Counted from the whole stretch's first letter, positions 4,691 to 5,471 are shown. The stretch is 63,309 nucleotides of DNA, filler included, from Octopus bimaculoides (GCF_001194135.2; 6 parts of 6 records of this genome joined end to end with filler, not necessarily neighbours in it), one strand, 5' to 3'. The notes: generated from the letters alone by a model not told the origin. Program-made: numbers and translations.

Positions 4691-4798
4691 GAAAAAAAAA
4701 AAAAATGAAATTATTATTCAGTTCTATATTTAAGAGATGAGGAATTATGGTAAATTATTTACATTTGATGGATATTTGTCCTCATCTTGTTTGTTGTT

Positions 4799-4844
4799 AA
4801 CACAACGTTTCGACTGATATACCCTCCAGCCTTCATCAGGTGTC
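4799..4844 (-). ncRNA. Minimal type I hammerhead ribozyme motif, family A, copy 1
   Basis: Minus strand reads GACAC-CUGAUGA-A-GGCUG(GAGGGUAUAU)CAGUC-GAAA-CGUU^GUGUU: stem I GACAC/GUGUU, intact core, stem II GGCUG/CAGUC, palindromic AACGUU stem III. Folded by eye. Confidence 0.8.
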
Positions 4845-4895
4845 TTGGGGAAATTTCGAACCTGGGTTCTCATTCCTAAGGTTTTTTTTTCGATG

Positions 4896-4957
<62 letters not shown>

Positions 4958-5093
4958 CATTAAGTAAGGCAGCGATCTGGCAGAATCGTTAACACGCCGG
5001 GCAATCAGTTCTATATTTAAGAGATGAGTATTTATGTACATTATTTACATTATTTACATTTGACGGATATTTGTCCTCATCTTGTTTGTTGTT

Positions 5094-5139
5094 AACACAA
5101 CGTTTCGACTGATATACTCTCCAGCCTTCATCAGGTGTC
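5094..5139 (-). ncRNA. Minimal type I hammerhead ribozyme motif, family A, copy 2
   Basis: Same as copy 1 apart from one stem II loop change (GAGAGUAUAU); CUGAUGA and GAAA intact; predicted cleavage GUU^ between 5099 and 5098. Confidence 0.8.
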
Positions 5140-5222
5140 TTGGGGAAATTTCGAACCGGGGTTCTCATTCTTAAGGATTTTTTCGATGTTGTTTTTGTTA
5201 TTATTATTATTATTATTATTAC

Positions 5223-5297
<75 letters not shown>

Positions 5298-5471
5298 CAT
5301 TATTATCATTAANNNNNNNNNNNNNNNNNNNNNNNNNNNNNNNNNNNNNNNNNNNNNNNNNNNNNNNNNNNNNNNNNNNNNNNNNNNNNNNNNNNNNNNN
5401 NNNNNNNNNNNNNNNNNNNNNNNNNNNNNNNNNNNNNNNNNNNNNNNNNNNNNNNNNNNNNNNNNNNNNNN

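What the first reader, a model, noticed from the sequence alone, without database searches (positions are those of the whole stretch)
4718..5310. Tandem pair of intact minimal hammerhead ribozymes 295 nt apart: a candidate self-excising, circularising (retrozyme-like) RNA unit
Seen: two same-strand motifs GACAC-CUGAUGA-A-GGCUG...CAGUC-GAAA-CGUU^GUGUU (minus, 4799-4844 and 5094-5139), both with complete catalytic cores. Stem III is only the loop-less palindrome AACGUU, so it cannot close within one motif. Both copies have CAGUC where the 12 kb copy has CAGCC, suggesting local duplication. Established: such minimal type I HHRs occur in Penelope-like elements and metazoan non-LTR retrozymes, where they cleave as dimers and tandem units of a few hundred nt give circular RNAs. 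Inference: a minus-strand transcript could pair the two palindromes in cis and release a 295-nt RNA (4804-5098). Caveat: that unit includes (AAT)n and an antisense SINE head, so it is not a clean retrozyme monomer.
Basis: partly seen in the sequence, partly recalled or inferred. Interest (0 to 1): 0.85.

Follow-up and report, generated by a model that had tools for sequence, protein, structure and literature searches.

The report
Hammerhead motifs in two octopus SINE copies
The two hammerhead ribozyme motifs are real, but they belong to two neighbouring, truncated copies of a common octopus short interspersed repeat that carries a Penelope-type minimal hammerhead, so this is an ordinary mobile-element remnant and not a dedicated circle-forming RNA gene.

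Summary
Observation confirmed. Two 46-nt motifs lie on the minus strand at 5139-5094 and 4844-4799. Each has a complete hammerhead core, a 5-bp stem I, a 5-6-bp stem II, no helix III (only ACGU) and a GUU cleavage triplet; the cut sites are 295 nt apart. Chance is excluded: no descriptor hit in 1 Gb of random sequence.

The window is Octopus DNA. The motifs are Penelope-like-element (PLE) type minimal hammerheads: an unpaired base between positions 9 and 10.1, G10.1-C11.1, and a palindromic 15.2-16.2. They sit in a dispersed repeat, with 3 copies in the window and 4 independent ones in 70 kb of O. sinensis and O. bimaculoides DNA.

The full-length element is a tRNA-like head with A and B boxes, then (AAT)n, then a ~180-nt body holding the hammerhead. 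The body ends 84-85 nt after the cut site and has no A-tail. Inverted partial copies abut the 5' end, and 5' truncation is variable.

Units A and B are truncated neighbours separated by a fragment of another SINE and a microsatellite. TRF finds no 295-bp repeat, the putative circle is 39% paired (z = -1.0), and Rfam hammerhead models do not match. Double-hammerhead cleavage of a read-through transcript remains possible but looks incidental. New member of a known kind; low to moderate interest.

The parts
5094..5139 (-). Minimal type I hammerhead motif of copy B (stem I GACAC/GUGUU, core CUGAUGA, bulged A, stem II GGCUG(G)/(U)CAGUC, GAAA, ACGU palindrome, cut after U5099)
4799..4844 (-). Minimal type I hammerhead motif of copy A (same sequence apart from one loop II base; cut after U4804)
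5006..5197 (-). Body of SINE copy B (AACATCG...HHR...AC-rich stretch, hairpin AGATGAG/CTCATCT, 3' end ...TTAAATATAGAACTG; 9-nt internal duplication at 5032-5060)
   Evidence: (D13)
5198..5312 (-). Internal (AAT)38 microsatellite of copy B; anything further 5' (a possible tRNA-like head) is lost in the assembly gap 5313-5471
4964..5004 (+). 41-nt fragment equal to the first ~41 nt of the abundant octopus tRNA-SINE ('SINE1'), antisense to the hammerheads, wedged between copy B and copy A
   Evidence: 87.5% to 4577-4705 over 32 nt; D15
4897..4963 (-). TTAATGAT(AAT)22: internal microsatellite at which copy A is 5'-truncated (or target microsatellite)
4718..4896 (-). Body of SINE copy A, ending at ...AGAACTG(A), 85 nt after the cut site
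4577..4705 (+). Unrelated SINE1 copy with A14 tail; on the minus strand its T14 is the first T4+ run (the Pol III termination signal) after copy A
11972..12048 (+). tRNA-like head of copy C (box A TGGCGGAGTGG, box B GAGTTCGATTCC, ...GTGACCTG), the 5' module of the full-length element
12049..12102 (+). Internal (AAT)n of copy C
12103..12248 (+). Body of copy C with a decayed hammerhead at 12155-12202; clear similarity to A and B ends ~37 nt earlier (...GTAAATAATG)
11954..11971 (-). Inverted 16-18-nt fragment of the element's 3' terminus (TTAAATATAGAACTGAAT), abutting the 5' end of copy C head to head

Best explanation
The two hammerheads are the ribozyme modules of two adjacent, same-strand, 5'-truncated copies of a high-copy Octopus short interspersed element. 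The full-length element has three parts. First, a ~75-nt tRNA-like head with consensus box A and box B (a Pol III-type promoter). Second, an internal (AAT)n. Third, a ~180-nt 3' module holding a B-box-like GGTTCGAAAT, a Penelope-like-element (PLE) type minimal hammerhead, an AC-rich stretch, a hairpin, and a fixed 3' end 84-85 nt past the cut site, with no A-tail or microsatellite tail.

Shown: the family, its anatomy, its termini, its variable 5' truncation, and inverted partial copies abutting the 5' end.

Inferred: the 3' module derives from a PLE pseudo-LTR/ORF junction, and the element is copied by PLE reverse transcriptase/endonuclease. PLEs start reverse transcription about 85-92 nt after the hammerhead cut site and tend to insert next to earlier copies; that would explain the head-to-tail pair here. 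On its own each motif is predicted to fold into an inactive hairpin (CGUU pairs with GAUG of the core). Full-length genomic copies show that the retroposed RNA is not cut at the hammerhead.

At this locus a read-through transcript could form a double hammerhead: stem I and stem III made between the two motifs, with helix III being only ACGU/ACGU. That would release a 295-nt RNA. This would be an incidental, probably inefficient by-product of two insertions, not a selected circular-RNA unit.
For: Species and family: translated unit hits only Octopus proteins. Copies: window A, B, C; L001 O. sinensis at 9979-10155 and 6089-6005; L003 O. bimaculoides at 4067-3887, 9790-9937 and 9670-9609. Copies are 3-7% from a six-copy consensus, whose hammerhead is intact.

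Composite structure: all three heads found are followed by (AAT)n plus the body, in window C, L001c1 and L003c2.

Termini: five copies or fragments end at ...TTAAATATAGAACTG, and a sixth (L003c1) at a mutated version, then diverge into unrelated flanks. Cut-to-end distance is 84, 84, 85 and 93 nt, against 85-92 nt for the Anolis PLE PAc (PMC11167929).

Variable 5' truncation: L003c1 starts at AATAGTAACATC with no long (AAT)n; window A starts inside the microsatellite.

Inverted partial copy abutting the 5' end in 3 of 3 full-length copies, as described for PLEs (PMC8557442).

Motif features beyond the core match the published PLE min-HHR consensus: a nucleotide between 9 and 10.1, G10.1-C11.1, palindromic 15.2-16.2, helix I of 4-5 bp and no helix III (PMC4209133).

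Monomer MFE is an inactive fold. The cis double hammerhead lies 16-19 kcal/mol above the MFE of the 381-nt transcript.
Against: No PLE reverse transcriptase/GIY-YIG ORF carrying this 3' module was found. The peptide encoded across the unit hit no PLE protein, and RT ORFs in L001 are generic RVT_1 several kb away, so the PLE partnership is inferred from signatures only. The head is not recognised as tRNA by ARAGORN or the Rfam tRNA model. The 41-nt piece after copy B comes from another SINE, not from the element's own sequence, so it is not a classical PLE 'tail'. Only seven body copies, three of them with heads, were examined, and two loci were chosen because they contain a copy. Covariation in the stems is uninformative: no double changes in 13 pairs. 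Nothing here measures cleavage or transcription.
Confidence: 0.68

Rival explanations
1. One reading: the pair is a retrozyme-like unit. A minus-strand transcript pairs the two AACGUU palindromes, cleaves at both GUU sites and releases a 295-nt RNA that is circularised and serves as a transposition intermediate.
For: Two intact min-HHRs on one strand 295 nt apart. The size lies within the 170-400 nt range of metazoan retrozymes (PMC7229834). No T4+ run between the motifs and a T14 just after the second unit. Both (AAT)n arrays start with TTAATGAT, so the periodicity could extend into the assembly gap. Min-HHRs have shown weak cleavage as dimers or trimers (PMC4209133).
Against: No 295-bp period by TRF under three parameter sets. 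The interval is a mosaic that includes a foreign SINE fragment. Other copies of the family are solitary. The hammerhead is minimal, not canonical with loop-loop contacts. The circle is 39% paired with z = -1.0. The active double-hammerhead fold is 16-19 kcal/mol above the MFE. Full-length copies prove uncleaved templates.
Confidence: 0.1
2. The pair arose by local segmental duplication of one insertion together with its microsatellite, not by two insertions. The hammerheads are passengers in either case.
For: A and B are closer to each other in the 138-column core (about 96%) than to C (about 91-93%), and they share the derived C->U at 11.2. Both have SINE1 sequence on the same side, and their microsatellites share the TTAATGAT edge.
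Against: Only one clearly shared-derived base. The SINE1 piece next to B stops exactly at the element's independently defined 3' terminus, which a random deletion after duplication would not produce. The flanks of A (full SINE1 with A14) and B (41 nt only) differ. PLE-type elements are known to insert next to earlier copies (PMC6765202).
Confidence: 0.15
3. The unit is an (ATT)n-tailed, LINE-dependent retroposon transcribed from the + strand, and the hammerhead is an inert motif on its antisense strand.
For: In A, B and C the long (AAT)n is always on the same side. The dominant octopus SINE has an (ATT)n tail. The SINE1 5' fragment fused to B's terminus looks like a template-switch chimera in that orientation.
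Against: Full-length copies show that (AAT)n is internal, between a sense-oriented head with box A and box B and the body. A 5'-truncated copy (L003c1) lacks the array. Fragments retain the hammerhead-sense 3' end (L003 9670-9609, window 11954-11971). A T5-T9 run would terminate Pol III just before the supposed tail.
Confidence: 0.05
4. The hammerhead-like motifs are chance matches with no ribozyme ancestry.
For: Rfam hammerhead models give no hit even at E<=10, on the whole piece or on 381 nt.
Against: No descriptor hit in 1 Gb of random sequence. Extra features not forced by the core match the PLE min-HHR consensus (PMC4209133). Rfam models require a helix III that this class lacks.
Confidence: 0.01

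Closest known systems
Minimal hammerheads (min-HHR) of Penelope-like elements (Cervera & de la Pena 2014, PMC4209133; Lunse et al. 2017; Frangieh et al. 2024, PMC11167929)
   Same: Type I topology. No helix III or loop 3, only the palindromic ACGU. Helix I of 5 bp with no defined loop 1. One unpaired nucleotide between A9 and G10.1, and a G10.1-C11.1 pair. Mostly dispersed single motifs, some in direct tandem. Element end ~85 nt after the cut site. Inverted partial copies at the 5' end. Expected to act, if at all, as dimers with low activity.
   Different: No RT/GIY-YIG ORF or pseudo-LTR pair is attached. Helix II is 5-6 bp, against the 7-8 bp typical of schistosome families. The motif sits in a ~330-nt element with a tRNA-like head and an internal (AAT)n.
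Schistosoma Sm-alpha / Sj-alpha SINE-like elements with a hammerhead (Ferbeyre et al. 1998; summarised in PMC6765202)
   Same: Short non-coding retroposon in which a Pol III-type promoter lies upstream of a type I hammerhead. Copies occur singly and head to tail. Cutting would separate the promoter from the downstream part.
   Different: [quoted passage not shown] The octopus element carries a helix-III-less minimal motif and is mainly dispersed. There is no sequence similarity.
Metazoan non-LTR retrozymes (Cervera & de la Pena 2020, PMC7229834; Li et al. 2026, bioRxiv 10.64898/2026.07.22.740005)
   Same: Non-coding, AT-rich, a type I hammerhead, spacing of a few hundred nt between two same-strand motifs, and a probable dependence on PLE machinery.
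   Different: Retrozymes are regular tandem arrays of one monomer with canonical HHRs, expressed as highly self-paired circles. Here there is no TRF-detectable repeat, the inter-motif segment is a mosaic, the HHR is minimal, and the predicted circle is poorly structured.
Octopus tRNA-derived SINEs OK, OR1, OR2 (Ohshima & Okada 1994, cited in PMC4824008)
   Same: tRNA-related head with A and B boxes, short, high copy number, Octopus.
   Different: I could not obtain those sequences, so identity with any of them is untested. No paper in the searchable library mentions a hammerhead in an octopus SINE.

Membership tests
Hammerhead ribozyme, type I | Conserved core C3-U4-G5-A6-N7-G8-A9 ... G12-A13-A14, A15.1-U16.1, H17 not G | tested here: met
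   CUGAUGA ... GAAA-CGU-U in both motifs; cut triplet GUU.
Hammerhead ribozyme, type I | Helices I and II base-paired and flanking the core, open end at helix I | tested here: met
   Stem I GACAC/GUGUU is 5 bp; stem II GGCUG(G)/(U)CAGUC is 5-6 bp. 98.7% of cells are paired over six copies, against 14-55% when the 3' partners are slid.
Hammerhead ribozyme, type I | Match to curated Rfam hammerhead covariance models | tested here: not met
   No hammerhead hit at gathering score or at E<=10, on the whole piece or on 381 nt. Expected, because helix III is absent.
Hammerhead ribozyme, type I | Compensatory covariation in the helices | tested here: inconclusive
   Of 13 pairs, none changes on both sides, 4 change on one side, and 8 never vary. 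The family is too young (3-7% divergence).
Hammerhead ribozyme, type I | Self-cleavage | not testable with these tools
   Needs in vitro transcription of one-motif and two-motif constructs.
PLE-type minimal hammerhead (min-HHR) | No helix III or loop 3; 15.2-16.2 palindromic, so helix III forms only between two motifs | tested here: met
   ACGU directly between GAA and U17.
PLE-type minimal hammerhead (min-HHR) | Unpaired nucleotide between 9 and 10.1, G10.1-C11.1, short helix I (4-5 bp) | tested here: met
   Bulged A, G-C closing pair and 5-bp helix I in all intact copies; criteria from PMC4209133.
Penelope-like element (autonomous) | ORF with telomerase-like RT and GIY-YIG endonuclease flanked by pseudo-LTRs | tested here: not met
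   No such ORF in the window or next to copies in L001/L003.
PLE-mobilised non-autonomous element | Insertion signatures: fixed 3' end ~85-120 nt past the HHR without A-tail, variable 5' truncation, adjacent inverted partial copy, head-to-tail neighbours | tested here: met
   3' end 84-85 nt past the cut; truncation variants; inverted partial copies at 3 of 3 full-length 5' ends; the A-B pair. Small sample.
PLE-mobilised non-autonomous element | Sequence identity of the 3' module with the pseudo-LTR of a resident autonomous PLE | not testable with these tools
   No octopus PLE sequence could be retrieved; needs the whole genome or Repbase/Dfam.
SINE | Small-RNA-derived head with internal Pol III promoter | tested here: inconclusive
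   Box A TGGCGTAGTGG (11/11 to TRGCNNAGTGG) and box B AGTTCGATTCC (10/11) at tRNA-like spacing in three copies. However, ARAGORN and Rfam tRNA do not call it.
Non-LTR retrozyme | Regular tandem repeat of one 150-450-bp monomer, with an HHR in each unit | tested here: not met
   No ~295-bp period by TRF, including with parameters 2 7 7 80 10 50 1000. The junction holds a foreign SINE fragment. Other copies are solitary.
Non-LTR retrozyme | Canonical type I HHR with loop 1-loop 2 tertiary contacts | tested here: not met
   Helix I is open with no loop 1, and helix III is missing.
Non-LTR retrozyme | Unit-length RNA predicted as a stable, highly self-paired circle | tested here: not met
   Circular MFE -39.2 kcal/mol, 39% paired, z = -1.0 against 200 dinucleotide shuffles.
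Non-LTR retrozyme | Expression as linear and circular unit-length RNA | not testable with these tools
   No octopus RNA data accessible.

The most novel reading that the evidence does not exclude
Octopus genomes carry a high-copy SINE that joins a tRNA-like Pol III head to the 3' recognition module (minimal hammerhead plus RT start region) of a Penelope-like element. That would be a true SINE parasitising PLE machinery instead of a LINE. In the library I could search, such a partnership is documented only loosely (Sm-alpha, 'short non-autonomous Penelope elements', retrozymes). The hammerhead-sense strand of the element also supplies start codons and first exons to several gene models.
Probability: 0.4. 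Interest if true: 0.55.

Novelty: new member of a known kind. Interest (0 to 1): 0.3.

Why it matters
Minimal hammerheads are already known to occur by the thousand in invertebrate genomes, so one more pair changes little, and the case for a circle-forming unit at this locus is weak. The family behind it is more useful. If its tRNA-like head and PLE-type tail are confirmed genome-wide, it would be a clean, abundant natural substrate for asking what a PLE reverse transcriptase recognises. It would also let one ask whether the helix-III-less hammerhead is a cleavage device or a structural tag. In addition, it would explain part of the SINE and unclassified repeat load of octopus genomes, and some spurious first exons in octopus annotations.

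Tried and rejected
- Rfam at gathering score and at E<=10 on the whole piece and on 381 nt: no hammerhead. All sub-threshold miRNA hits lie on microsatellites.
- Exact-pattern scans of metagenome and viral contig collections for the motif: nothing.
- Protein-space trick to fetch octopus DNA: three searches. The third, with SINE1 frames, found nothing.
- Direct look-ups of P0001, P0002, P0003 and two window ORFs failed. Cluster members P0006-P0008 worked.
- Literal sequence search in papers: nothing. No octopus mention in the supplement of the retrozyme paper. Lunse 2017 and Ferbeyre 1998 are not held.
- I first favoured an (ATT)n-tailed antisense retroposon. I dropped it once full-length copies showed that the microsatellite is internal.
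- I considered the open frame MRTQVRNFPKTPDEGW... as the N-terminus of a PLE ORF; no PLE protein matched.
- Pfam on window and locus ORFs: no PLE domains.
- Covariation counting was uninformative.

Full report
**1. What is there**

On the minus strand the window reads ...CCCCAA-GACAC-CUGAUGA-A-GGCUGG-AG(G/A)GUAUA-UCAGUC-GAAA-CGU-U|GUGUU-AACAAC... twice, at 5139->5094 and at 4844->4799. In standard hammerhead numbering:
- GACAC/GUGUU is helix I (5 bp, one G.U).
- CUGAUGA is C3-A9.
- One A is unpaired before G10.1.
- GGCUG(G)/(U)CAGUC is helix II (5-6 bp, closed by G10.1-C11.1).
- GAA is G12-A14.
- A15.1-C15.2-G16.2-U16.1 follows with no loop.
- U17 is the cleavage nucleotide.

A third copy on the + strand (12155-12202) has a 2-nt bulge in helix II and an A.C mismatch in helix I.

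**2. More than chance**

A descriptor for this minimal architecture finds only these two sites in the window. It finds none in 3000 first-order Markov simulations of the window and none in 1 Gb of composition-matched random sequence. The motif is therefore a hammerhead by descent.

Rfam's hammerhead models do not see it, even at E<=10 on a 381-nt slice. That is expected, since those models need the helix III that this class lacks.

**3. Which kind of hammerhead**

Cervera and de la Pena (PMC4209133) defined 'min-HHRs' of Penelope-like elements (PLEs) by these features:
- no helix III or loop 3;
- helix I of 4-5 bp with no clear loop 1;
- a conserved extra nucleotide between 9 and 10.1;
- G10.1-C11.1;
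- palindromic 15.2-16.2.

Every feature is met here. The same paper and later reviews (PMC6765202, PMC7761336) report three things. Single motifs are inactive. Dimers or trimers cleave only weakly in vitro. Most copies are dispersed single motifs.

In line with this, the predicted fold of one motif is an inactive hairpin in which CGUU pairs with GAUG of the core. In a 381-nt two-motif transcript, the double-hammerhead fold lies 16-19 kcal/mol above the MFE. In that fold, helices I and III form between the two motifs, and helix III is only ACGU/ACGU. Nearest-neighbour energies ignore tertiary contacts, so this is weak evidence, but it does not favour efficient cleavage.

**4. Where the window comes from**

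No coding sequence is evident. The piece is rich in microsatellites and assembly gaps. Translating the unit and searching protein space gave only Octopus hits: O. bimaculoides A0A0L8FV75 and a dystrobrevin model, O. sinensis LOC115224785, and O. bimaculoides A0A0L8FK86.

Through cluster members I could fetch three octopus loci:
- L001, O. sinensis, 47 kb.
- L002, O. vulgaris, 36 kb, orthologous to L001.
- L003, O. bimaculoides, 23 kb.

**5. The family**

BLAST of the unit against these loci found further copies:
- L001 9979-10155 (+).
- L001 6089-6005 (-), internally deleted.
- L003 4067-3887 (-).
- L003 9790-9937 (+).
- L003 9670-9609 (-), a fragment.

With window copies A, B and C that makes seven bodies in about 83 kb of independent sequence. 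Three loci were ascertained through a copy, so the density estimate is crude, but the family is clearly abundant. Copies differ by 3-7% from a six-copy consensus, whose hammerhead is intact. Four of seven bodies keep an intact motif. One has U7->A, which the core tolerates. The others are broken by a bulge plus a mismatch, by two CpG transitions (G12->A, C15.2->U), or by a deletion. This is the pattern of neutral decay of transposon copies.

**6. Anatomy of the full-length element**

In window C, L001c1 and L003c2 the body is preceded by (AAT/AAC)n. Before that comes a conserved ~75-nt segment: (C)GGGCATATGGCGTAGTGGTTAAGAGCGCGGGCTACTAACCCCACGATTCCGAGTTCGATTCCAGGCAGTGACCTG. It contains a perfect box A (TGGCGTAGTGG) and a near-perfect box B (AGTTCGATTCC) at tRNA spacing. 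ARAGORN and the Rfam tRNA model do not call it, so 'tRNA-like' rests on the promoter boxes alone. Every head found is linked to a body.

The (AAT)n that puzzled me is thus internal to the element. Copies A and (as far as can be seen) B are 5'-truncated within it. L003c1 is truncated just after it and has no long array.

At the 3' side, five copies or fragments end at ...TTAAATATAGAACTG, and L003c1 at a mutated version (...TAAAATATAGAAAAG), then run into unrelated flanks, with no A-tail or microsatellite tail. The cut-to-end distance is 84, 84 and 85 nt, and 93 nt in B, which has a 9-nt duplication. In two copies (window C, L003c2), clear similarity to the other copies ends about 37 nt earlier, at ...GTAAATAATG.

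**7. Insertion signatures**

All three full-length copies have an inverted partial copy of the same element abutting their 5' end, head to head:
- Window 11954-11971: the last 16-18 nt of the body.
- L001 ~9790-9836: the 3' half of the head plus (AAY)n.
- L003 9609-~9690: the first ~22 nt of the head joined to the last ~63 nt of the body, forming a perfect palindromic junction.

Craig et al. (PMC8557442) list the hallmarks of PLE insertions as partial tandems, an inverted 5'-truncated copy next to the 5' end, and an optional 30-40-bp 'tail'. Frangieh et al. (PMC11167929) showed two things for an Anolis PLE. Reverse transcription starts at two internal sites 111-118 nt into the ORF, which is 85-92 nt after the hammerhead cut. 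Hammerhead cleavage is not needed for insertion.

The octopus element matches these points in its 84-85 nt distance, possibly in the ~37-nt alternative end, and in the inverted copies. It also matches in that full-length copies span the cut site, so the template RNA was uncut. I therefore read the body as a PLE-derived 3' module, and the whole as a SINE-like element that uses PLE machinery. No autonomous octopus PLE with this module could be retrieved, so this step is inference.

**8. The pair in the finding**

In hammerhead sense, the locus reads as follows:
- gap;
- TTAATGAT...(AAT)38;
- body B;
- 41 nt that equal the first ~41 nt of the abundant octopus SINE ('SINE1'), in antisense;
- TTAATGAT(AAT)22;
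- body A;
- ATAATAATTTCA;
- T14 plus a complete antisense SINE1.

The 295-nt interval is therefore a mosaic, not a monomer. TRF finds no ~295-bp period under three parameter sets, including those of the published retrozyme pipeline. As a circle the interval is 39% paired, with z = -1.0. A and B are about 96% identical in the core, against 91-93% to C, and they share one derived base. That fits two insertions from one subfamily, or an old local duplication; I cannot tell which.

PLE-type elements are known to land next to earlier copies (PMC6765202), which makes a head-to-tail pair unremarkable. No T4+ run interrupts the minus strand between 5312 and 4718, and a T14 follows 13 nt after copy A. 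One transcript could therefore carry both motifs, and the double hammerhead is topologically possible. I rate real excision and circularisation at this locus as unlikely and incidental.

**9. Rejected orientation model**

Before the extra loci were available, three observations pointed the other way: the constant side of (AAT)n, the (ATT)n tail of SINE1, and the SINE1 5' fragment fused to B's terminus. Together they suggested an (ATT)n-tailed retroposon with the hammerhead on the antisense strand. Three findings argue against it: the full-length copies, the truncated copy without the array, and the fragments that keep the hammerhead-sense 3' end. The origin of the 41-nt SINE1 piece, and of the similar junction at 9847-9954, stays unexplained.

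**10. Comparison and novelty**

The motif is a member of the PLE min-HHR class. The element works like the schistosome Sm-alpha SINE-like elements (a Pol III promoter followed by a hammerhead; PMC6765202), but with a minimal ribozyme and a dispersed distribution. It fails four tested criteria of non-LTR retrozymes.

Octopus tRNA-derived SINEs have been known since 1994 (cited in PMC4824008). I could not compare sequences with them. No searchable paper links an octopus repeat to a hammerhead. Verdict: a new member of a known kind, of low to moderate interest. The family-level reading, a tRNA-headed SINE riding on PLE machinery, is the part worth a genome-wide check.

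Noticed in passing
window 4799-4896 minus strand; proteins P0001, P0003, P0004, P0002: The hammerhead-sense strand of the unit carries an ATG and an open frame, MRTQVRNFPKTPDEGWR(VYQ.KRCVNNKQDEDKYPS...). This frame is used as the first coding exon in several octopus gene models (O. 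bimaculoides A0A0L8FV75 and A0A0L8FK86; O. sinensis LOC115224785 isoform X2). The splice donors are GG|GTATAT, inside loop II of the hammerhead, or AAT|GTAAAT. This is either exonisation or an annotation artefact, and it hints at sense-strand transcripts with an uncut hammerhead.
   Followed up: partly
window 4577-4705 (+), 9931-~10010 (+), 3446-3570 (+), 8071-8240 (-) with tail 8022-8070: Four copies of the abundant octopus tRNA-derived SINE (GGTGGCGAGCTGGCAGAA...TTCGGGGTCGATAAATTAAGTACCAG...CCTATAGTAGAAAGG). One has an A14 tail and one an (ATT)16 tail followed by (AGT)21.
   Followed up: partly
window 4949-5004 and 9847-9954: The same junction occurs twice: (ATT)n-ATCATT(ATT)AA directly in front of the 5' end of the abundant SINE. 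It occurs once beside hammerhead unit B and once with no hammerhead unit. This suggests a target preference of that SINE or a shared origin; unexplained.
   Followed up: partly
L003 9609-9700; L001 9790-9850; window 11954-11972: Head-to-head inverted partial copies abut the 5' end of every full-length hammerhead SINE seen. In L003 the junction is a perfect palindrome (CCATATGCCC-AT-GGGCATATGG), and the inverted copy has an internal deletion joining head nt ~22 to the last ~63 nt of the body.
   Followed up: partly
window 11152-11231, 11266-11345, 11783-11862: Three ~80-nt direct repeats of 70-76% identity (family D14), an unrelated dispersed or local repeat.
   Followed up: no
window 393-1203, 1574-1662, 2439-2999, 5472-5725, 12441-12975: Very long (TCA)n, (TA)n, (TG)n, (ATC)n and (AAT)n arrays. 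All four internal N gaps abut microsatellites. Every sub-threshold Rfam miRNA hit (mir-297, mir-466 and others) lies on these arrays and is an artefact.
   Followed up: yes
L001 17422-18804, 31418-32281, 40551-42042; L001 22663-23751: The O. sinensis locus also holds several reverse-transcriptase (RVT_1) ORF remnants and a PIF1-like helicase ORF (Helitron-like). None is adjacent to the hammerhead SINE copies.
   Followed up: partly
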